Source of the DNA: Octopus sinensis | Taxonomy: Eukaryota | Direction of reading: 5' to 3' | Length of the DNA: 22,913 nucleotides | Assembly (NCBI RefSeq): GCF_006345805.1 | Contig: NW_021823561.1 | Location: 1-22,913 of the forward strand | Shown: in pieces, positions 1-21,599 of the stretch | Layout of the letters: each line of letters begins with the position of its first letter | Position numbering within the stretch: position 1 is the stretch's first letter | Position numbers and translations under genes: made by a program | Notes under the pieces: generated by a model | Database searches by the model: none | What the model saw: the letters and a program-made list of their open reading frames with translations, nothing else | What the model was told of the DNA's origin: nothing

Positions 1-512
1 TGTGAAGACGTGTTGAGGCAAGTGAGGATCAGAATCGAAATCGATCAATGGAAATTGCAGATGTGCTACCAGTGCCGGTGGCATGTCGAAACTCTGCTTG
101 TGAAGACCCATTGAGGCAAGTGAGGATCAGAATCGAAATCGATCAATGGAAATTGCAGATGTGTTACCAGTGCCGGTGGCATGTAAGAGAACTTTCCGTT
201 TCGCGACCGTTGCCTGCACCGCCCCGTTTCGTGTCCGTTGCCAGCCTCGCCTGGCCTCGTGCCGGTGGCACATAAAAAGCACCATCCGTTCGTGGCCGTT
301 TGCCAGCTCTGTCTGGCACCAGTGCGGGTGGCACGTAAAAAGCACCCACTACACTCACGGAGTGGTTGGCGTTAGGAAGGGCATCCAGCCGTAGAAACAC
401 TGCCAGATTTGACTGGGCCTGATGAAGCCTTCTGGCTTCACAGACCCCAGTAGAACCGTCCAACCCATGCTAGCATGGAAAACGGACGCTAAATGATGAT
501 GATGATGATGAT
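1..512 (+). mobile_element. 3' end (3' UTR) of an RTE-like non-LTR retrotransposon, 5'-truncated, with (GAT)n tail
   Basis: Subrepeats containing gtgccggtggcac, core ggttggcgttaggaagggcatccagc, palindrome ccatgctagcatgg (465-478), then aacggacgctaaa and (GAT)n to 512. Homologous to the copies at 4751, 10105, 15466 and 16083. RTE clade assignment is from family recognition. Confidence 0.75.
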
Positions 513-2602: not shown

Positions 2603-2660
2603 CTGCCAAGACACAGTAGCCTAGGGTAGTTTTTCTACATGGTCGACTCCTCAATCATCT

Positions 2661-2706
2661 AACACATGCATGCATGGAATATGGATGTTAAACGATGATG
2701 ATGATG
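2661..2706 (+). mobile_element. Tiny 3'-terminal remnant of the RTE-like element
   Basis: catgcatgcatggaatatggatgttaaacgatgatgatgatg matches the family's 3' end and tail. Confidence 0.6.
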
Positions 2707-4750: not shown

Positions 4751-5240
4751 TCATCATCATCATCATCGTTTAACGTCCGCTTTCCATGCTAGCATGGGTT
4801 GGACCGTTTGACCAGGGTCTGGGAAGCCAGGAGGCTGCACCAGTCTGATCTGGGAGTGTTTCTACAGCTGGATGCCCTTTCTAATGCCAACCGCTCCGAG
4901 AATGTAGTGGGTGCTTTTTACGTGCCACCGGCACAGGTGCTAGGTGAGGCTGGCAACAGCCACGATCGGTTGGTGCTTTTTATGTGCCACCGGCACAGCG
5001 GCCAGTTGAGGCGGCACAGGCAACGGCCATGTTCGGATGGTTCTTTTATGTGCCACCGGCACAGGTATCACAACTACAATTTTCATTGATTTTTGATTGA
5101 TTTCGATTTCACTTGCCTCAACAGGCCTTCGCAAGCAGAGTTTTGTGTCCCAAGAAGGAAAGGTATGTATAAGTGGACTGGCTACCCCAGGTAAAGGCCA
5201 TGGGTTATGGTCTCACTTGTCCTGCCAGGTCTTCTCACAC
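4751..5240 (-). mobile_element. RTE-like LINE 3' end including the last ORF codons, 3' UTR minisatellite and (GAT)n tail
   Basis: (CAT)n at 4751-4767, palindrome at 4784-4797, core, four gtgccaccggcac subrepeats. Minus-strand 5' end reads ...gag aag acc tgg cag gac aag tga (EKTWQDK*), interpreted as the ORF terminus. Confidence 0.8.
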
Positions 5241-8093: not shown

Positions 8094-9322
8094 CAGGGGT
8101 TGGAAAAATAATGGAAACACCTAGCATCATAAATTTGAAATATCTATAAAACCATCAAAAGCTTGTTCATTTTTATGTTTTATGATCTATTATTAGTGTT
8201 GTTTAATGTTTTGCTAAAATTGCTGTTTCTTTTCAGATATCATCAGAAAAAGGTAACTAAAATTCATTAAAATGACAGATCTATCAGATTTTCAAAGAGG
8301 TCAAATTAGTGGTGCTCATACAGCAGGCGCTAGCGTAACGAAAACATACGAAAGGTTTTGTGTATCAAGAAGTACTGTCTTGAAAGTAATGACAGTCTTT
8401 GAGAAAGAGGGAAATATCTCTTCTTCAAAACAAAACTCTGGAAGAAAACCAAAACTTTCAGACGGGGACCGTCAGACTCTTACACGAATTGTTAGAAACG
8501 ATCACAAAAGTACAGCTCCCAGCAGAGCTTAATGACCACCTCAAGAACCCAGTTTCCACAAAAACTGTTTGCCAGGAGCTACTACACAAAGCCGGATTTC
8601 ACAGGAGGGCTGCAATCAGAAAACCATTACTTTCAAAAACAAACGTCACAAAGCATTTAGAGCGGAGTACAAACCTATAGAATTGGTCCCTAGAGTAGTG
8701 GAAGAATGTTATTTTCTTGGACAAGTCATCCTTTACCTTATTTCTGACCACCGGCTGAGTGAAGCATTTGACCTAGACTGCCTTATTCCAGCTGTTAAAC
8801 ATGGAGGAGGATCTGTGATGATCTGGGGAGGCTATATCTTGGAAATTTACCAGCCCAATGGTTTCCCTTCAATTAATAGTCAAGACTATTTAAGCATTTT
8901 ATCTGATCAAATTCATCCTATGGTTGCAGAACTGTTTCCGGAGGGAAAAGTAATCTTTCAGGATGATAATGCACCAATTCACACAGCTAAAGTTGTTACC
9001 AAATGGCATGAAGAGCATTCTAGTGAAGTTGAACATCTTATCTGGCCACCACAGTCCACATATCTCAATATTATTGAATATTTATGATGCATTTTAGAAA
9101 AACAAGTAAGGATTCGATATCCTCCACCATCATCACTACAAGAACTGGAGACTGTTTTAGCAGAAGAATGGACAAAAATTCCTTTGGAAACAATTTAAAC
9201 TTTGTACTAGTCCATACCTCATAGAATTCAAGGTGTAATTACTGCCAAAGATGGTCCTACCCCATATTAAAATAAATTTGCTTGAAATTTTAAGGTGTTT
9301 TCATTATTTTGTCCAGCCCCTG
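8094..9322 (+). mobile_element. Tc1/mariner DNA transposon, full length (1229 bp), inactive
   Basis: TIRs caggggttggaaaaataatggaaacacct and reverse complement of right end caggggctggacaaaataatgaaaacacct (~30 bp). TA TSD at 8092-93 and 9323-24. Confidence 0.95.
8272..9270 (+). pseudogene. Disrupted Tc1-type transposase with DD36E spacing
   Basis: MTDLSDFQRGQISGA HTH start, GRKPKL, VIFLDKSS (first D at 8720; WSDES-like), VKHGGGSVMIWG, FQDDNAPIH, WPPQSTYLNIIE, end GPTPY*. Frameshift near 8525, small deletion near 8755, several in-frame stops. Confidence 0.93.
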
Positions 9323-9949
9323 TATATCAAATGCACACATTCAGATACATATACAGCTAAAAGCTGCATCACTCACATTCTTCTATAGACACAGTGAAGT
9401 AAACACACTCATACCTTCTAATACCCACATGCACATCATACATTCATATACAAACTAATACATACACACAAACAACAGAACAAACTGAATGTGCAATAAT
9501 ATTTACTAATCTCACCAGGACTTATTCTTGGAATACAAAGAGGAGAGTATTCCAAAATAAAAAAAAAGAAACAATAATAAAATCTAAGCCAGCCTGCTAG
9601 CACAGAGTGGTTTGGCACATTAGCGTCCATCCTTCAAGTTCAGAAACCTGATTTCATATTGAGATGTTAACGAAGAACCGAGATTTTTCTTCATCAACAA
9701 CTGAGAAACAAAGCTGCAGCACCACAGTACATTACAGATGTATAAAAATGGTGTGTGCATGTGCTATGGTAAACGAGTTGATTCATTAGTGATAGATGAG
9801 GGGCTTACTAACTTTCGTTTATTCAACAATGAGCAAGCTCTTGTATATTCGTCACCCTGCTCTGTGCTGAAGCCACCAAAATCTGTTGTTATATTACATT
9901 TCCAAGTGCTGAAGCTTATAATCAGTGAGCTGCCACTCTGCAGTAGATG

Positions 9950-10085
9950 CAGCTTGTTTTCAATCGATTGACTGGAGCAAACATGAAATGAAGTGCCTTG
10001 CCCAAGGCCACACCACTCTATCCAGACCAAGAACTGAACTTGTGACCTTATGATATAAAGTGCTATAGCGTAATTGCTAGGCCAC
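9950..10085 (-). mobile_element. Decayed CORE-like tRNA SINE
   Basis: gactggagcaaacatgaaatgaagtgccttgcccaagg...gaactgaac is the reverse complement of a CORE-like ccttgggcaaggcactt segment and B box. Confidence 0.55.
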
Positions 10086-10104: not shown

Positions 10105-10558
10105 CCACCATCATCATCATCGTTTAACATCCGCTTTCCATGCTAGCATGGGTTGGACGATTTTGACTGAGGGCTCGCGAACCAGATGGCTGCACCAGGC
10201 TCCAATCTTGATCTGGCAGAGTTTCTACAGCTGGATGCCCTTCCTAACGCCAACCACTCCAAGAGTGTAGTGGGTACTTTATACGTGCCACCAGCACGGG
10301 GGCCAGTCAGGTGGTACTGGCAATGACCTCGCTTGAATCTTTTACACATGCTACCGGCACAGGTGCCAGTAAGGTGATGCTGGTAATGATCATGCTCGAA
10401 TGGTGCCCTTTTACGTGCCACTGGCACGGAAGCCAGTTGGCCGCTCTGGCAACGATCATGCTCGGATGGTACTCTTGGCACCCTACTAGCACGGGCACAA
10501 GTGCCAGTAAGGTGACGCTGGTAACGATCACACTCGAATGGTGCCTTTTATGTGCCAC
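10105..10558 (-). mobile_element. RTE-like LINE 3' end with 6-bp TSD
   Basis: (CAT)n tail, palindrome at 10138-10151, core, subrepeats. tgtata is present at 10099-10104 and 10559-10564. Confidence 0.85.
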
Positions 10559-10805
10559 TGTATATAATATATGGTATATAAAGATGATGTTAGCTATGAT
10601 AATAAATAAGTGATTACTAACTTTATTTAACAGTGAGAAAACTATGTATATTACAGATATATAAAGTTGTGTGTATTATATTAATAGAAGTGATTTATTG
10701 GTCATAGATGTATGGTTAATAGCTTCAGTTTATTTAACAGTGAACAACTCTTTATCATCAAGTACTGTCAGGCCAACACTCAGTAGGCAAGTAGTTTGCT
10801 GAATG

Positions 10806-12816
10806 GTGAAAGCTGAAATTTAATTACTGGAAAAATAAACTGTACCCTTCCCATATTCAGGTGGTCGATGGGTATGGTCCATCTGCAGCATGTGATAATA
10901 CATAGGATGCGGTTTGGTTTTATTTATAGTTTGTTATGATCTGTTACGGAGAGATTCAGGACAGGCAAAACTGGTAACATCAGTGACAAATTTGATTTTA
11001 TGTCCACTGGAGTTGTTCCTTTGTGCTGATCAAATGTGGAACCTGTGATTGTTCTAGTATGTTTGTGTATATCATTTTATTATCTCCACCTTCGCTAAGG
11101 CGGAGGTATTGTTTTCAGTCATGTTTATTGTTTGTCCATGGACAAGATATCTCAAGAACCACTGGATGTTTGGCCTCATGACTGGCACAAGCTGATTAGA
11201 TTCATATATCTATATCCCTGTATATGCCATATTTTTGTTTTGTTGCACATTTCCACAGTCTGACATGCAATGATTAGTTGCATGTGTTGCAGTTGAAAAA
11301 TACTTTAATATCTATGGATTATGCATGGGGTACCCAGAAACTGTGAAAGCTGAAATTTAATTACTGGAAAAATAAACTGTACCCTTCCCAATCAGGTGGT
11401 CGATGGGTATGGTCCATCTGCAGCATGTGATATACATAGGATGCGGTTGGTTTGGTTTTATTTATAGTTTGTTATGATCTGTTACGGAGAGATTCAGGAC
11501 AGGCAAAACTGGTAACATCAGTGACAAATTTGATTTTATGTCCACTGGAGTTGTTCCTTTGTGCTGATCAAATGTGGAACCTGTGATTGTTCTAAGTATG
11601 TTGTGTATATCATTTATTATCTCCACCTTCGCTAAGGCGGAGGTATTGTTTTCAGTCATGTTATTTGTTTGTCCATGGACAAGATATCTCAAGAACCACT
11701 GGATGTTTGGCCTCATGACTGGCACAAGCTGATTAGATTCATATTATCTATACCTGTATATGCCATATTTTTGTTTTGTTGCACATTTCCACAGTCTGAC
11801 AGCAATGATTAGTTGCATGTGTTGCAGTTTGAAAATACTTTAATGTCTATGGATTAGCATGGGTACCCAGAAACTGTGAAAGCTGAAATTTAATTACTGG
11901 AAAAATAAACTGTACCCTTCCCATATTCAGGTGGTCGATGGGTATGGTCCATCTGCAGCATGTGATAATACATAGGATGCGGTTTGGTTTTATTTATAGT
12001 TTGTTATGATCTGTTACGGAGAGATTCAGGACAGGCAAAACTGGTAACATCAGTGACAAATTTGATTTTATGTCCACTGGAGTTGTTCCTTTGTGCTGAT
12101 CAAATGTGGAACCTGTGATTGTTCTAAGTATGTTTGTGTATATCATTTTATTATCTCCACCTTCGCTAAGGCGGAGGTATTGTTTTCAGTCATGTTTATT
12201 TGTTTGTCCATGGACAAGATATCTCAAGAACCACTGGATGTTTGGCCTCATGACTGGCACAAGCTGATTAGATTCATATTATCTATATCCCTGTATATGC
12301 CATATTTTTGTTTTGTTGCACATTTCCACAGTCTGACATGCAATGATTAGTTGCATGTGTTGCAGTTTGAAAATATACTTTAATATCTATGGATTATGCA
12401 TGGGGTACCCAGAAACTGTGAAAGCTGAAATTTAATTACTGGAAAAATAAACTGTACCCTTCCCATATTCAGGTGGTCGATGGGTATGGTCCATCTGCAG
12501 CATGTGATAATACATAGGATGCGGTTTGGTTTTATTTATAGTTTGTTATGATCTGTTACGGAGAGATTCAGGACAGGCAAAACTGGTAACATCAGTGACA
12601 AATTTGATTTTATGTCCACTGGAGTTGTTCCTTTGTGCTGATCAAATGTGGAACCTGTGATTGTTCTAAGTATGTTTGTGTATATCATTTTATTATCTCC
12701 ACCTTCGCTAAGGCGGAGGTATTGTTTTCAGTCATGTTTATTTGTTTGTCCATGGACAAGATATCTCAAGAACCACTGGATGTTTGGCCTCATGACTGGC
12801 ACAAGCTGATTAGATT
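10806..12816. repeat. Tandem array, ~3.7 copies of a 533-542-bp unit
   Basis: Unit starts gtgaaagctgaaatttaattac at 10806, 11343, 11876 and 12418. Copies are near-identical. The last copy stops at ...gctgattagatt (12816). Confidence 0.97.
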
Positions 12817-13040
12817 TTGGGATCAGTCCAGTACCGGACAAGGATTCTGGATTATTTACCAGTTTTTTTTTTCTTTTTTACTTAATTTTTGTGAGCGGTC
12901 AGGTTCATTTTTAGAATTCCCATTTGTGAGATCAGTCAAGTTTATTTAAGATATTCTCATTTTAGAAATTATCTCCGGCCAATCGTTGAGAGGACGTTGG
13001 TGATGCCTTGGTGGAGGTTTGCACTCTCTGAGTGCTTGTT
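12692..13040 (+). mobile_element. Non-autonomous Helentron/HINE (DINE-1-like) element, ~350 bp
   Basis: Left stem-loop tatctccacctt-cgct-aaggcggaggta, right subterminal ggtggaggt complementary to the left end, terminal hairpin gcactc-tct-gagtgc, T-rich flanks, no TSD. Orientation is by convention. Confidence 0.75.
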
Positions 13041-13044
13041 TTCT

Positions 13045-14280
13045 TTACATTATTGTCAATGTATTGTGAATACTGTGGCAGTGTTGTATTTCCTAGTATT
13101 TTGTCCTTCATACATGTGTGTAGGGTCTGTTTATATAGTTGCTTAGCTCTAGGTTAACTCTAATCAAGCAGGCTTATGACTGAAGTCATTCCAGCTGTGA
13201 TCTTCCCATATATTTGTATATTTAGGATTAGATTGTCCAGTGTCAGCATAGTTATTGAAGTCATGTACTTTCTTAGGATAAAAGGATGTGATGTAAAAGA
13301 GAGTTGGCTGCTATTTCTAGCTGGTCAAGTTATCATGCTGAGCTTCCTCTTCCTTGTTGGTTCAATGTTTATGTTGTTGAGTGTGATGGTTGGTTATAAT
13401 TGATGTTCTCATGAGTTGTTGATAAGAAGGGAGAGGTTGGGTTTGGAAGGGGTTATATTCAGTCTGTTGTTTTGCAACTAGGTTGTTAGGTTTAATATAG
13501 GGTTAGGGAAGTTGTGCAGCTATGCTTTTGAGAGGCGGGAAGATGTGATTGAGATGTCAACTACATATGAAGAAGTGCATATACTTTGAGGTGTGAAAGG
13601 TCATGCTGGGGCAGGTTAAATTGAAAGCAAATGAAAGGACAGAACCACCACATGGTTATTTCAGTTGGGAAATTGCAAACAGATGCTGATACATGCTGTA
13701 TAAACTTGTCAGATTGAGAAGTAGTTTACTTGTCAACATTTCATATTGTTTTGCAAGGAAGTGATAATTACTTTGCAGAAGATGGAGAGAAGAACTTTAC
13801 TGACGTGAATGATAATTACAATAAGAGTGTGGGCTTTTGTTATTGAAACCATCGTGCATGACAGTTGAGTGTAGAGGTGTGAATGTAGAAATTAAGAGAT
13901 GGGAATATGTGGATTAGTGATGTCAAGAAAAGGTCTTTGTAAAATGTTCAAAGGTATGCAAAACAGGTTTTAGAATCAGATGCATTCCACAACAGCAGCT
14001 TCAGGGACATAAGTCTATGTGATACTACTCCAGTAGGACATTAAAACTGTAAATATTTCATCCTGCATACTATGTGATACTACATCAGTTGGGCCTTAAA
14101 ACTATAATGAATTTATCCCCATTACAGACTTTGTGGATTTTGATAGAGTTGGTACAAGTGGTTGTAGATGCTGTTGCATTAATTGATTCTTTTAGGCAGT
14201 AGATATTTTAGATGCATATTTTTGATTTCCTCTACTGTGTTTTTGGAGTCGGACAGAATGACGGGTTCAAAATAATGGTC
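13045..14280 (-). mobile_element. Highly decayed Penelope-like element (RT and GIY-YIG remnants)
   Basis: Fragmented minus-strand peptides KIHK, GPTDVVSH/CPTGVVSH, TFYKD, PLHSTVMHDG resemble the Penelope RT N-terminal region. FNLPQHDLSHLKVYAL resembles the GIY-YIG HFNLPxHSxxDLKV motif. Many stops and frameshifts. Confidence 0.5.
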
Positions 14281-14285
14281 TAAGT

Positions 14286-14908
14286 CAGTGGTTTTCAATT
14301 TTTATGTGTCATATGAGAAATCAAGCAAAAAAAAAAATTTACTGGTACATTAATATTTTATGCTTCAGACAAGAGGAAAGATTGCCCATGAAGCTTTACA
14401 TGGTTTCAAAGACAGGTGGAAGAGAGAAGTTAGCCTCAAACAAGAAACCTGGTTTGAATGTTTGCAAGAGATGGGTCCACTAAAGGCACCTAAGATGCAA
14501 GGTAGTAGTGCTAAACTAAGTGATAGATTAAGTCTCCCACATATGTATGACAGAGCAGGATTTGAACTCACAATGCAAAGAACAAGAACAAATACCACAA
14601 AGCAGTCAACCCCATATTCTTATAGTTTTGCCAATCTGACTGGTGCTTTTTTGTTTTATCTACCCACAAAAGCATGAAAGGCAAAGTAGATTCCAGTGGT
14701 ATTTGAACATAGAGCAAATAAAATCAGACTGAATACCACAAAGTATTTATTCAATCCAATGCTCCTCTACCAATTTACCATTTTTTGTATAGAAAGTATA
14801 GAAAAAACCCCCAACTATTTGAAAAACATTTTCTTATCCAAAGTGCACCAGTAATATTTTGCTCAATCTCTTGTGTGTTGTGAAATCAAAAATGATTGAG
14901 AACTGCTG
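14286..14908. mobile_element. hAT-like MITE remnant with imperfect long terminal inverted repeats, containing SINE fragments
   Basis: Left cagtggttttcaa...gagaaatcaagcaaaa..tttactggtaca vs reverse complement of right cagcagttctcaa...gagattgagcaaaatattactggtgca. A further hAT-like right end ttcaaaaccactg is at 15148-15160. TSDs are degenerate. Confidence 0.4.
14370..14760 (-). mobile_element. Two decayed tRNA-SINE fragments
   Basis: B-box reverse complements ggatttgaactcac (~14548) and atttgaac (~14701), plus Meta-like atgaaaggcaaagtaga. Confidence 0.45.
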
Positions 14909-15465: not shown

Positions 15466-15863
15466 GTCACTGCCAGAGCAGCTGTCTGGCACATACAGAA
15501 CACCATTTGAACGTGATTGTTGTCAGTGTCACCTCACTGGCACTTGTGCTGGTGGCACGTGAACAAAACATTCGAGCAAGGTTGTTGTCAGTGCTGCTGG
15601 ACTGACTCCTGTGCAGGTGGTACGTAAAAAACACCATTTTCGAGCATGGCCATTGCTAGTACCACCAGACTGGCCTCATGCTGGTGGCACTTTAAAAGCA
15701 CCCACTACACTCTCGGAGTGGTTGGCATTAGGAAGGGCATCCAGCTGTAGTAACTCTGCCAGATCAGATTGGAGCCTGGCACAGCCATCTGGTTCGCCAG
15801 TACCCAGTCAAATCATCCAGCCCATGCTAGCATGGAAAGCAGATGTTAAACGATGATGATGAT
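15466..15863 (+). mobile_element. RTE-like LINE 3' end
   Basis: Subrepeats with ggtggcacgtgaac/ggtggtacgtaaaaaacacc, core, palindrome at 15822-15835, (GAT)n tail. Confidence 0.8.
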
Positions 15864-16082: not shown

Positions 16083-16406
16083 TCATCATCATCACCATCG
16101 TTTAACGCCCGCTTTCCATGCTAGCATGGGTTGGATGGTTCGACCGGGGTCTGGGAAGCCAGGAGGCTGCACCAGGCTCCAGTCTGATTTGGCAGTGCTT
16201 CTACAGCTGGATGCCCTTCCTAACGCCAACCACTCCGTGAGTGTAGTGGGTGCTTTTTATGTGCCACTGGCATAGGTGCCGGGGGAGGCTGGCAACGGTC
16301 ATGATCGGTTAGTGCTTTTTTCATGCCACCGGCACAGAAGCTCGTCAAGGTGGTATTGGCCACATTTCTATGGTGCTTTTTACGTGCCACTGGCACAGGG
16401 ATCACA
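16083..16406 (-). mobile_element. RTE-like LINE 3' end
   Basis: (CAT)n, palindrome at 16116-16129, core ggatgcccttcctaacgccaacc, three subrepeats. Confidence 0.85.
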
Positions 16407-16805: not shown

Positions 16806-17342
16806 CATAGCAGGTATCATGATGTCCCAGGCAGAATAACCTACAGGTTTCTGTATTACTACTTCTATGTAGATATGAAAACAAAAATGTTTAAACAAGA
16901 GCAAAACAAGCCTCGTCGTATTGATATTTTACAAAAGGACATTAGCAATGGCAACTAAAGCAGAAACAAAAGCTGTTCACAACTGAAATCAGGTCACAAA
17001 CTTGTCATACAAGAAGCTCGTCTTCATTAAACATACAATTGTGATATCAATTACTTTACTGCAGACCAATTTGTTATCAATTCAGAGTAAAACATTCTCA
17101 ATGAATATATTGTTTGGTAATGGATAAATTCAGAACAAAAATCTACAGATCTGCTTAATCATATTTAAGAATGGTTAAAGAACACTCAAATAGTCTTAAC
17201 ACAAGAAGAACTGAATGGTTCACACTTACTGATTGGCTTAGCACACATTGGGGTGAGAGAAGAAAATTCAAAGTCAGAAAGGATTGGTCAATATTTACTT
17301 ACAATTAAGCATTGTAACAACCTACAAAATAAACCGGTTTAA
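16806..17342 (+). pseudogene. Possible decayed reading frame of unknown origin
   Basis: 179-codon frame with five internal stops, all TAA, and protein-like composition. It ends at the TTAA of a MITE insertion. No motif recognised. Confidence 0.25.
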
Positions 17343-17563
17343 CCCTTTCGTTACCAACCCAGCCAAAACCACCTCTGGCTCTGTAGTACAAATGTCTTGT
17401 TTTCATAAGTTTTGCATCAAAATATACCACCAAACCTTAGTTGCAATTTATATTCTTAATACTAGCTTAATGATAACTAAGTTATTTTACTAAATTCGTT
17501 GTTATATTTAAAATAATTGAAAGAAACACAGAGCATCTCAAAATAAATACAGCAATGAAAGGG
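17343..17563 (+). mobile_element. piggyBac-like MITE (221 bp)
   Basis: TTAA at 17339-42 and 17564-67. Termini ccctttcgttac and caatgaaaggg. Confidence 0.88.
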
Positions 17564-17775
17564 TTAAGGTAGCTGAAAATTGTTTTTACTAAGTGTGAAT
17601 GATGTGTTTGGGAAAAAAACAAAACAATAATGATGCTGATGATTCTTTTTATGTATATACAAAGCCAAGAATGATTTTGAATTGTGAATCATGATGTGCA
17701 TGTTTTCCTCAAGGAAATGCAACAGAGCAGACCGAAACTGGAAACCATGTTATGGTTATGATTTATACTTCCAGT

Positions 17776-17989
17776 ACTCTTTTATTTGTGACAATCAGTT
17801 GAATGTGGCCATGCTGGAGCATCACCTTTAGTCGACCAAATTGACCCCAGGACTTATTCTTTGTAAGCCTAGTACTTATTCTATCGGTCTCTTTTGCCAA
17901 ACTGCTAACTTACAGGGACATAAACACACCAGCATCGGTTGTCAAGCGATGTTGGGGGGACAAACACAGACACACAACCATATACACAC

Positions 17990-18049
<60 letters not shown>

Positions 18050-18053
18050 TATA

Positions 18054-18087
<34 letters not shown>

Positions 18088-18243
18088 CGACGGGCTTCTT
18101 TCAGTTTCTGTCTACCAAATCCACTCACAAAGCTTTGGTCGGCCCGAGGCTATAGTAGAAGACACTTGCCCAAGGTGCCACACAGTGGACTGAACCTGGA
18201 ACCATGTGGTTGGTAAGGAAGCTACTTACCACACAGCCACTCC
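17776..18243 (-). mobile_element. Full-length tRNA-derived SINE family 2 (CORE-like; octopus OK-type) with internal (CA)n(TA)n
   Basis: Head ggagtggctgtgtggtaagtagc, B box ggttcagtcc, CORE-like caccttgggcaagtgtcttc, microsatellite, tail ...gctccagcatggccac...taaaagagt. Confidence 0.9.
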
Positions 18244-19170: not shown

Positions 19171-19312
19171 CCATTTTCTGTTAGAATACACTGCTTTTGT
19201 TTCAGTTAACTTTGAATATAACAAAAGAATTTAGTAAATCAACTTTGTCGTTATTAAGCTGGTGTTTGGAACATAAGATGAAATTTTGATGGAAGCTGTG
19301 ATTTAGATCACT
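19171..19312 (-). mobile_element. Older related TTAA MITE fragment in opposite orientation
   Basis: ttaa|ccatttt start. tataacaaaagaatttagtaaa...ttattaagctggtgtttggaacataa matches the reverse complement of the MITE interior. Truncated at the TTAA of the next MITE. Confidence 0.55.
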
Positions 19313-19316
19313 TTAA

Positions 19317-19513
19317 CCCTTTTGTTACCAACCCAGCTGAAACCGGCTCTGGCACTGAGTACAAATGTTCTGAATTAAAATCTTCTACCACACCTTAGTT
19401 ACAATTTATGTTCCTAACACTAGATTAATGATTATTTTACTAAATTCTTTGTTATATTTAAAATAATTGAAAGAAAAACAGAGCATCTCAACAGAAATGT
19501 GGTAAGAAAAGGG
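19317..19513 (+). mobile_element. piggyBac-like MITE with a small internal deletion
   Basis: TTAA at 19313-16 and 19514-17. Termini cccttttgttacc and aagaaaaggg. Homologous to 17343-17563. Confidence 0.85.
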
Positions 19514-19544
19514 TTAAAATATATAATAGAGAAACAATTCTTAA

Positions 19545-19749
19545 CCCTTTTGATACCAACCTGGCTGAAACCACCTCTGTAGTACAAATGTCTTGTTTTC
19601 ATAAGTTCTGAATTAAAATCTTCCACCAAGCCTTAGTTACAATTTATGTTCCTAAATGATAACTAAGTTATTTTACTAAATTCTTTGTTATATTTAAAGT
19701 AATTGAAAGAAACATACAGCATCTCAAAATAAATACAATAATGAAAGGG
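19545..19749 (+). mobile_element. piggyBac-like MITE
   Basis: TTAA at 19541-44 and 19750-53. Termini cccttttgatacc and taatgaaaggg. Confidence 0.87.
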
Positions 19750-20299
19750 TTAAAATAGGAAGCTTGTCACAAGAATCACAAGAACTGGGAGTGGACTAAT
19801 GTGTGTTTGTATTAAAAAGGTTAAATTGAAAAAGGATGATGAAACCTTGTTGGAGAGGTGATGCGTGGGTATGAGGCATGTAACTGTTTGTCTACATGAC
19901 AAGTGAGACCTGCATAACTCCACAGTTTGAATGGTGCTTATGAAGATCCTGAGATTGATACTAATCAGTCAATCCAGTAGATGGGGCCTCACAAGAGTTA
20001 GGGGCCCAGTGCACTATAAAGTTGTTGAAAGGAAGGCCCTCCAAATGGTGAATATTCTCTTCTGATGACCCCTGAAACCTACTGGTATCTGGTATGTGGA
20101 ATTTTTGACTGAATGCACTTGAACAAGCAAGCTGTTTCCAATTCTTCAAAAGAACATCAAAAACATAAAATATTGATTGTTACAAGTTCGGTATAAAAAG
20201 GAATTTATTAAAACAATTCATCATACATTCTTATGTGCAGTAGAATGAATGTCACAGAAATACAGTATCAGCATGTGTGTGTGCTTGACAGTATGTGGC

Positions 20300-21183: not shown

Positions 21184-21347
21184 GGAGTGGCTGTGTGGTA
21201 GGTAGCTTGCTTACCAAGCACATGGTTCCGGGTTCAGTCACACTGCGTGGCACCTTGGGCAAGTGTCTTCTGCTATAGCCTCAGGCCAACCAAAGCCTGT
21301 GAGTGGATTTGGTAGACGAAACTGAAAGAAGCCGTCATATATATATA

Positions 21348-21399
<52 letters not shown>

Positions 21400-21599
21400 A
21401 TATGTTTGTGTTTGTCCTCCCAACATTGCTTGACAACCAATGCAGGTGTGTTTACATCCCCGTAACTTAGCGGCTCGGCAAAAGAGACTGATAGAATAAG
21501 TACTAGGCTTCCAAAGAATAAGTCCTGGAGTTGATTTGCTCGACGAAAAGGCAGTGCTCTAGCATGGCCACAGTCAAATGATTGAAACAAGTAAAAGAG
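21184..21599 (+). mobile_element. Full-length SINE family 2 with internal (TA)n
   Basis: Head ggagtggctgtgtggtaggtagc, B box, caccttgggcaagtgtcttc, (TA)n at ~21337-21388, tail ...agcatggccacagtcaaatgattgaaacaagtaaaagagt. Confidence 0.9.

What the first reader, a model, noticed from the sequence alone, without database searches (positions are those of the whole stretch)
10806..13040. Tandem amplification of host flank plus the left end of a Helentron-like element
Seen: structure is (A-H'-B)x3 then A-H(full). A is 274 bp of flank, H' is the first 125 bp of the HINE including its left hairpin, and B is 143 bp. Only the last unit continues into the complete element. Established: Helitron/Helentron elements use rolling-circle replication and are linked to tandem arrays, which usually comprise whole elements or internal repeats. 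Inference: amplifying external flank together with a partial terminus suggests a nick- or hairpin-triggered re-replication or circular (eccDNA) intermediate, i.e. a HINE seeding a new satellite from host DNA. Caveat: the breakpoint lies inside the element rather than at a terminus, so ordinary slippage or MMBIR is also possible.
Basis: partly seen in the sequence, partly recalled or inferred. Interest (0 to 1): 0.7.

Follow-up and report, generated by a model that had tools for sequence, protein, structure and literature searches.

The report
Young tandem duplication straddling a transposon's left end
A 540-bp stretch made of ordinary flanking DNA, the first 122 bp of a small non-coding rolling-circle-type transposon and 143 bp of unknown origin is repeated 3.7 times head to tail; it looks like an ordinary, very recent local duplication that happened to include the transposon's end.

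Summary
Units start at 10806, 11343, 11876 and 12418 (537/533/542 bp). The fourth shares only its first 399 bp, to 12816, then runs on into a complete ~350-bp element (12695-~13046). That element is real. A profile built only from unrelated metagenome copies hits it at E=5.5e-22, and it has the hallmarks of a Helentron-associated non-autonomous element (HINE). The locus holds four element 5' ends and one 3' end.

The mechanistic inference is not supported. Neither novel junction (12274|12275, element position 122 to B; 12417|12418, B to A) lies at an element terminus or hairpin. The flank/5'-terminus junction is simply carried inside every unit. Both junctions are blunt. The 143-bp B segment has no detectable source.

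In 120 related loci from other animals, terminus-spanning tandem duplications are no commoner than background: 1 of about 120 3' ends and 0 of 24 5' ends, against 1.2% of bases.

Units differ almost only by 1-4-bp indels, so the array is very young or poorly polished.

Best reading: a one-off non-homologous duplication, then unequal exchange, with the element as passenger. Modest interest.

The parts
10806..12816 (+). Whole tandem array: 3.74 copies of a ~540-bp unit (A-H'-B)x3 + A-H'
   Evidence: unit starts at 10806, 11343, 11876, 12418; homology ends at 12816
10806..11342 (+). Unit 1 (A 10806-11081, H' 11082-11202, B 11203-11342)
   Evidence: about 4 small indels relative to units 3/4
11343..11875 (+). 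Unit 2 (A 11343-11618, H' 11619-11739, B 11740-11875); the most divergent unit, about 13 indel events and 1-2 substitutions
11876..12417 (+). Unit 3 (A 11876-12152, H' 12153-12274, B 12275-12417)
   Evidence: A-H' is 100% identical to unit 4
12418..12694 (+). Fourth copy of A: 277 bp of non-element DNA ending in the T-rich site ...CATTTTATT
   Evidence: no match to the element family or elsewhere in the window
12695..13046 (+). Complete HINE-like non-autonomous element (~350 bp), colinear with family members from other animals
   Evidence: profile HMM built without the window: 12701-13040, E=5.5e-22, hmm 8-258 of 271; for both termini
12697..12720 (+). 5' subterminal palindrome / hairpin CTCCACCTT-CGCT-AAGGCGGAGGT. 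CTCCACC (12697-12703) is the inverted complement of GGTGGAG at 13010-13016
   Evidence: read directly from the sequence
12736..12751 (+). Degenerate GTTT/GTCC microsatellite-like stretch, at the position of the (GTYT)n tract of family members
   Evidence: alignment; HINE feature per PMC7492417
12816..12817 (+). Right breakpoint of the duplication, inside the family-conserved block GATTAGATT|TTGG (element position 122|123)
13010..13017 (+). 3' subterminal inverted repeat GGTGGAGG
   Evidence: read directly from the sequence
13021..13035 (+). 3' palindrome GCACTC-TCT-GAGTGC, followed by the T-rich tail TTGTTTTCTTT to ~13046
12275..12417 (+). B: 143-bp segment of unknown origin joining H' position 122 to the start of the next A. 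Contains a 9-bp-stem palindrome (GACATGCAA/TTGCATGTG region)
   Evidence: no source found

Best explanation
This is a recent local segmental duplication in an animal genome, and the transposon is a passenger.

Ancestral state (inferred): left flank, then A, then a complete ~350-bp HINE-like element inserted at a T-rich site, then right flank.

Step 1 (inferred): one non-homologous event duplicated the 399-bp segment that runs from 277 bp upstream of the element to 122 bp inside it. The two copies are separated by 143 bp of foreign filler, B. Likely routes are double-strand-break repair between sister chromatids with captured filler, or a template switch.

Step 2 (inferred from near-identity): the resulting 399-bp direct repeats expanded from 2 to about 4 copies by unequal sister-chromatid exchange or replication slippage.

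Shown directly: the layout, the element's identity and termini, the positions of the junctions and their bluntness. The array has no evident function.
For: - The layout is (A-H'-B)x3 + A-H', with exact register.
- The element's 5' end is fixed by 24 independent copies whose flanks diverge immediately before TTACCTCC. The window reads ATT|ATCTCCACC.
- The fourth copy continues colinearly with the family through the conserved GATTAGATT|TTGG block. The full copy is therefore the ancestral state and B is foreign.
- A and B are absent from the family.
- Neither novel junction coincides with an element terminus or hairpin. Both are blunt, with no shared bases (sequence).
- A upstream of the first 5' end is identical to the internal A copies, so the array arose at this locus and was not transposed in.
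- Inter-unit differences are about 17 indel events against 1-2 substitutions, so the copies are effectively identical.
- Terminus-spanning duplications in 120 family loci match background: 1 of about 120 3' ends and 0 of 24 5' ends, against 1.2% of bases.
- The same window holds several other tandem duplications unrelated to this element.
- An old paralogue of the left flank aligns weakly across 10805|10806, hinting that flank-A contiguity is ancestral.
Against: - The source of B is unknown, so step 1 is not reconstructed.
- An alternative order of events needs only one novel junction: B-A ancestral, simple duplication of B-A-H', then loss of the first B.
- Four 5' ends with one 3' end is also the signature reported for rolling-circle-amplified truncated Helitrons.
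- The breakpoint inside the element lies about 65 bp after the microsatellite, roughly where HINE central repeats begin. This could be more than coincidence.
- The survey used short-read metagenome assemblies of other species, which collapse tandem repeats and give little power.
Confidence: 0.6

Rival explanations
1. Transposon-machinery origin. One version is aberrant rolling-circle replication of a 3'-truncated template, as in the Xiong-Dooner-Du model. Another is a transposase nick at the 5' end collapsing a fork. Either would produce a concatemer with many 5' ends and a single 3' end, carrying flank with it.
For: - The window holds four 5' termini and one 3' terminus in direct orientation.
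- This matches the 'multiple 5' but single 3' end' arrays summarised in PMC12628747.
- The element has intact-looking termini and hairpins.
- One related element in another animal (L048) has a 148-bp duplication of its 3' end plus flank.
Against: - In a rolling-circle concatemer the novel junction falls exactly at the 5' terminus, and units contain only element DNA.
- Here 420 bp of non-family DNA (B+A) separates each truncation point from the next 5' end.
- A is the local upstream flank, and the array starts with A.
- No junction lies at a terminus or hairpin.
- The family survey shows no enrichment.
- No autonomous partner was found.
Confidence: 0.12
2. Assembly artefact or inflated copy number. 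The organism has one or two units, and the assembler expanded a repeat from noisy long reads or haplotype overlap.
For: - Differences between units are almost all 1-4-bp indels, mostly in homopolymers. They are concentrated in the interior unit 2, while units 3 and 4 are identical. This pattern is typical of unpolished long-read consensus.
- No independent copy of the junctions could be found.
Against: - Artefactual duplications are usually two copies at a join, not 3.7 in-register copies.
- Artefacts do not create a 143-bp foreign segment with two clean junctions repeated three times.
- Unit-specific errors imply that reads traversed distinct units.
Confidence: 0.13
3. A nascent or already mobile composite. 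The stretch from the first 5' end (11082) to the only 3' end (~13046) behaves as a tandem-repeat-carrying HINE whose 'central repeats' (B-A-H') are internalised host DNA. Alternatively, the 540-bp unit is a dispersed satellite family.
For: - Left arm, then array, then right arm is formally the architecture of repeat-carrying HINEs (PMC7492417).
- The breakpoint lies shortly after the microsatellite, where such arrays begin.
Against: - The array extends 277 bp upstream of the first 5' end, with the same A. This marks a local origin.
- Known HINE central repeats are about 140-180 bp and are not reported to contain the left arm.
- There is no second copy of A or B in 22.9 kb and none in the databases reachable here.
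Confidence: 0.08

Closest known systems
HINEs / DINE-1-like non-autonomous Helentrons (Thomas et al. 2014, PMC4067079; Cg_HINE of oyster, PMC7492417)
   Same: - No coding capacity.
- A palindromic 5' subterminal repeat 2 nt from the end, with its complement.
- A GTYT-type microsatellite after the left arm.
- A 3' subterminal inverted repeat followed by a 6-bp-stem palindrome, then a short T-rich tail.
- T-rich (TT) insertion site.
- The family tends to be associated with tandem repeats.
   Different: - The tandem repeat here is not an internal array of 140-180-bp monomers. It is a 540-bp unit that includes the left arm itself plus external flank, and it starts outside the element.
- Linkage of this particular family to a Rep/helicase/endonuclease partner was not shown here.
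Rolling-circle-amplified truncated Helitron arrays with multiple 5' ends and one 3' end (Xiong, Dooner & Du 2016, as summarised in PMC12628747)
   Same: Head-to-tail units each carry the element's 5' end. Only the last unit has the 3' end.
   Different: - Units there are truncated elements joined directly to the next 5' terminus and integrated at new sites.
- Here each unit carries 420 bp of non-element DNA.
- The flank is the local one, and no junction is at a terminus.
Tandem repeats / satellites whose monomer embeds a transposon fragment plus non-TE DNA (e.g. chicken HinfI repeat with a CR1 fragment, listed in PMC9659126)
   Same: The monomer is a chimera of a partial mobile element and unrelated DNA, amplified by general duplication and unequal exchange.
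   Different: Those are established multi-copy satellites. This is a single array of fewer than 4 copies with essentially no divergence.

Membership tests
HINE (Helentron-associated interspersed element) | Non-coding, short, interspersed in many copies with defined ends | tested here: met
   - Only junk ORFs are present.
- More than 120 loci share the 3' end.
- 24 copies have clean 5' ends.
- A profile HMM hits the element at E=5.5e-22.
- Copy number in this genome itself is unknown; there is 1 full copy in 22.9 kb.
HINE (Helentron-associated interspersed element) | 12-15-bp subterminal inverted repeats, 2-4 nt from the 5' end and 38-60 nt from the 3' end; the 5' one is palindromic or has a nearby complement | tested here: met
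   - CTCCACC at 12697-12703 starts 2 nt from the 5' end at 12695.
- Its complement GGTGGAG lies at 13010-13016, about 30-36 nt from the 3' end.
- The perfect inverted repeat is only 7-8 bp, shorter than typical.
- The 5' palindrome folds at -6.4 kcal/mol.
HINE (Helentron-associated interspersed element) | 5-10-bp palindrome 8-35 nt from the 3' terminus | tested here: met
   GCACTC-TCT-GAGTGC at 13021-13035, 7-11 nt from the end.
HINE (Helentron-associated interspersed element) | Insertion into T-rich / TT sites without target-site duplication | tested here: inconclusive
   - The flanks ...ATTTTATT| and TTGTTTTCTTT| are T-rich, and family copies are preceded by TT.
- No empty site was available to show the absence of a duplication.
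HINE (Helentron-associated interspersed element) | Autonomous Helentron partner (Rep-helicase-endonuclease) sharing the termini | not testable with these tools
   - No helicase or Rep ORF occurs in the 120 loci.
- No eukaryotic genome or repeat library was available.
Rolling-circle-amplified truncated Helitron array (Xiong et al. model) | Multiple 5' ends, single 3' end, direct orientation | tested here: met
   Four 5' hairpins and one 3' motif.
Rolling-circle-amplified truncated Helitron array (Xiong et al. model) | Units made of element sequence only, with the truncation point joined directly to the next 5' terminus | tested here: not met
   - B+A (420 bp) lies between the truncation point and the next 5' end.
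- Neither B nor A matches the family.
- A equals the flank upstream of the first 5' end.
Tandem-repeat-carrying HINE (central repeats) | Array confined between left and right arms; monomers distinct from the arms | tested here: not met
   The array begins 277 bp upstream of the first left arm, and each monomer contains the left arm.
Ordinary segmental tandem duplication / nascent minisatellite-satellite | Head-to-tail near-identical copies in register, a partial terminal unit, unique flanks, junctions unrelated to mobile-element ends | tested here: met

The most novel reading that the evidence does not exclude
The locus is a snapshot of how a repeat-carrying HINE is born. A duplication spanning the element's 5' boundary has placed host DNA (B-A) and extra left arms between an upstream 5' end (11082) and the only 3' end (~13046). 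A Helentron transposase could then mobilise a ~1.97-kb composite and spread a new 540-bp satellite of host origin. This would explain how unrelated repeats come to sit between related HINE arms.
Probability: 0.07. Interest if true: 0.6.

Novelty: new member of a known kind. Interest (0 to 1): 0.25.

Why it matters
If it is only a local duplication, it is one more example of a young tandem repeat whose unit happens to include a transposon fragment, and it is of little consequence.

It would matter if arrays of this kind recur at this family or if the composite has moved. It would then give a concrete, testable route by which rolling-circle elements internalise host DNA and seed satellites. Current models (captured filler against intrinsic sequence) leave that step open.

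A side result is useful for annotation. The element belongs to a family whose 23-nt 3' end is conserved exactly in more than 120 contigs from other animals.

Tried and rejected
1. Other copies of A, H or B in the window: sensitive blastn found none. A family profile HMM found only the four known positions.
2. Independent copies of the junctions: exact look-ups of two ORFs spanning A/H'/B and A/H'/rest found nothing. A protein-level homologue search also found nothing.
3. B as a diverged version of the rest of the element or of the right flank: rejected, with alignment scores at or below the shuffle mean.
4. B as a patchwork of short templated pieces from nearby DNA, the MMBIR signature: rejected, with 13 matches of 8 nt or more against 13.6 expected.
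5. Duplication of a larger A-H-flank segment followed by internal deletion: rejected, because B is absent downstream of the full element for about 10 kb.
6. A pre-existing A-B array with the element inserted at A|B: rejected, because the sequence after the element's 3' end is not B.
7. Autonomous Helentron in the related loci: no Rep/helicase ORFs.
8. Matching the termini to published HINE or Helentron sequences: no textual match in two papers or their supplements. Table S2 of PMC7492417 was illegible.
9. Rfam and tRNA scans of the window: nothing.
10. The viral-contig scan for the 3' motif found nothing.
11. Identifying the organism: a Tc1/mariner ORF search gave only generic animal transposase hits. 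A SINE-sequence literature search gave nothing relevant.

Full report
**Context**

The window is eukaryotic and looks like an animal genome. GC content is about 37%. It has AC/AT microsatellites, several SINE-like repeats with (CAT)n tails, and a Tc1/mariner transposase remnant. It contains no tRNA or Rfam matches. The organism could not be identified with the tools available.

**1. The observation**

TRF missed the array because the period exceeds its 500-bp limit. Repeat finding and alignment show it clearly.
- Units start at 10806, 11343, 11876 and 12418, with lengths 537, 533 and 542 bp.
- The fourth unit matches for 399 bp, to 12816, and then diverges into unique sequence.
- Each unit splits into three parts. 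A is 277 bp, H' is 122 bp, and B is 143 bp.
- Units 3 and 4 are identical over A-H'. Unit 1 differs by about 4 small indels. Unit 2 differs by about 13 indel events and 1-2 substitutions.
- Most indels are single-base changes in short homopolymers. This pattern points to noisy long-read consensus more than to evolution. The true units are probably near-identical, and the array is either very young or poorly polished.

**2. Is H a real element, and where does it start?**

Nothing else in the window resembles A, H or B. I therefore scanned metagenome contigs for the 23-nt 3' motif GGAGGTYTGCRCTCTCYGAGTGC.
The viral collection gave none.
- Twenty-four copies show a clean 5' end. Their flanks diverge immediately before TT|ACCTCCGCCAAGGAGGTTATGTTTT.
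- The window reads ATT|ATCTCCACCTTCGCTAAGGCGGAGGTATTGTTTT, so the element starts at 12695.
- At the 3' end, similarity among copies stops 7-10 nt after GAGTGC. This places the window's end at about 13042-13046.
- A full alignment shows the window copy colinear with family members throughout. It covers the palindrome, the GTYT tract, CAAGATAnCTCAA, GATTAGATTTTGG...GATCC...GGATTCTGGAT, and the 3' end.
- A profile HMM built without the window sequence hits 12701-13040 at E=5.5e-22. It hits the three truncated copies over profile positions 8-88 only.
- A, B and both flanks have no match in the 120 loci.

**3. Is it a HINE?**

Published definitions require several features (PMC4067079; PMC7492417). 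These are subterminal inverted repeats with a 5' complement, a microsatellite after the left arm, a 3' palindrome close to the end, and T-rich targets.

All of these are present here.
- CTCCACC (12697-12703) pairs with GGTGGAG (13010-13016).
- The 5' palindrome folds at -6.4 kcal/mol, z = -3.6.
- A GTTT/GTCC tract lies at 12736-12751.
- The 3' palindrome GCACTC-TCT-GAGTGC lies at 13021-13035.
- The flanks are T-rich.

The link to an autonomous Helentron was not testable. No Rep/helicase ORF occurs in the 120 loci, and no published terminus sequence matched. 'HINE-like' is therefore a structural assignment.

**4. What the junctions say**

The array has two kinds of novel junction.
- H' position 122 joined to B: GATTAGATT|CATATT, against the ancestral GATTAGATT|TTGGG.
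- The end of B joined to the start of A: GAAACT|GTGAAAG, against the left flank GAATG|GTGAAAG.

Both are blunt, with no shared bases. The first lies inside a family-conserved block. It is about 95 bp from the 5' hairpin. The second lies 277 bp upstream of the element.

The flank/5'-terminus junction (12694|12695) is identical in all four units. It was copied as ordinary internal sequence. A transposase nick, a hairpin-stalled fork or a rolling-circle concatemer would each be expected to place a novel junction at the terminus. None is there.

A upstream of the first 5' end is the same as the internal A copies. The array therefore arose at this locus and was not inserted as a concatemer.

**5. 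The B problem**

B cannot be traced to any source.
- It is not elsewhere in the window.
- It is not in the family.
- It is not related to the remainder of the element or to the right flank.
- It is not a mosaic of nearby short templates: 13 matches of 8 nt or more, against 13.6 expected.

Two histories remain.
- (i) The ancestral state was flank-A-H. A-H' was then duplicated with 143 bp of captured filler between the copies.
- (ii) The ancestral state was X-B-A-H. B-A-H' was then duplicated in a simple event with one junction, and the first B was later lost at the left edge.

An old, about 70%-identical paralogue of the left flank (9722-9990) aligns with 10640 to about 10821. This crosses 10805|10806 weakly, with score 32 against 22.7±4.4 and 9 of 300 shuffles as good. 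The flank tail alone reaches 5 of 500. This mildly favours history (i).

Either way, two 399-bp direct repeats 143 bp apart are an ideal substrate for unequal sister-chromatid exchange or slippage. That would account for growth to 3.7 copies.

**6. Is the element predisposing?**

I used the 120 family loci (560 kb) as a proxy.
- 1.2% of bases lie in tandem duplications of period 50-1500 bp.
- One of about 120 3' ends lies in such a duplication. This is L048, where the last ~85 bp of the element plus ~65 bp of flank are duplicated at a 148-bp period.
- None of 24 5' ends does.
- This shows no enrichment. Power is low, because these are other species and short-read assemblies collapse repeats.

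The window itself has several other tandem duplications unrelated to this element. They include old ~100-bp repeats in the immediate left flank.

**7. Comparison with known systems**

- The closest published pattern is tandem arrays of truncated Helitrons with many 5' ends and one 3' end, attributed to rolling-circle amplification of a template that lost its terminator (summarised in PMC12628747). The window shares the four-to-one end count. It fails the defining feature that units are element-only and joined at the 5' terminus.
- Repeat-carrying HINEs have left arm, array and right arm. Here the array starts outside the element and every monomer contains the left arm.
- Satellites whose monomer embeds a TE fragment plus other DNA are already known (PMC9659126).

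**8. Verdict**

The proposed element-driven mechanism is not supported. An ordinary, very recent local duplication is the best explanation (about 0.6). The rivals are an assembly artefact (about 0.13), a transposon-machinery origin (about 0.12) and a mobile composite or dispersed satellite (about 0.08).

The most novel reading still open is a repeat-carrying HINE caught at birth. I put its probability at about 0.07. No step in this work needed to be referred.

Noticed in passing
window 13013-13035; loci L001-L120: The element's 23-nt 3' end (GGAGGTYTGCRCTCTCYGAGTGC) is conserved exactly in more than 120 evidently eukaryotic metagenome contigs. The 5' palindrome and internal blocks (CAAGATAACTCAA, GATTnAATTTTGG..GATCCGGA) are conserved too. 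This is a very widely conserved non-autonomous family whose published name and autonomous partner I could not establish.
   Followed up: partly
L048:2349-2636: In another animal's copy of the same family, the last ~85 bp of the element plus ~65 bp of 3' flank are tandemly duplicated (148-bp period, 95% identity). It is the only terminus-plus-flank duplication among about 120 loci.
   Followed up: yes
window 12277-12284 vs 12691-12698: Bases 3-10 of B (TATTATCT) equal the 8-mer that spans the element's 5' boundary (TATT|ATCT). It sits 2 nt after the H'|B junction. It is not significant against the count of chance 8-mers, but its position is curious.
   Followed up: partly
window 300-511(-), 2616-2705(-), 4751-5064(+), 10105-10558(+), 15487-15863(-), 16083-16363(+): There are at least six copies of a SINE-like repeat with a (CAT)n tail and the core CGTTTAACRTCCGCTTTCCATGCTAGCATGGGTTGGA. 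Several carry internal ~62-bp sub-repeats (TRF rows at 228-346 and 4910-5064; 10290-10549). Two copies form a 186-nt inverted pair, 15678-15863 / 16088-16273.
   Followed up: no
window 8399-9087 (+): Degenerate Tc1/mariner transposase remnant with a DDE_3 domain. The best hits are 'Tcb1/Tc1 transposase' proteins of various animals, with E down to 8.5e-42.
   Followed up: partly
window 9722-9850, 10556-10650, 10640-10765: The left flank of the array is itself an old, about 70%-identical ~100-bp repeat, with two adjacent copies plus one copy upstream of a SINE insertion. This locus has duplicated before, independently of the element.
   Followed up: partly
window 17338-17572, 19312-19522, 19540-19758: Another interspersed repeat family is present, as a tandem pair (~236-bp spacing) plus one dispersed copy.
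   Followed up: no
window 17827-18243 vs 21184-21548: Two inverted copies of a repeat (arms 83-93% complementary), each next to AC/AT microsatellites, bracket about 3 kb.
   Followed up: no
window 13000-14500: The right flank of the element has a strong G-over-C skew (up to +0.36) without obvious coding or repeat content.
   Followed up: no
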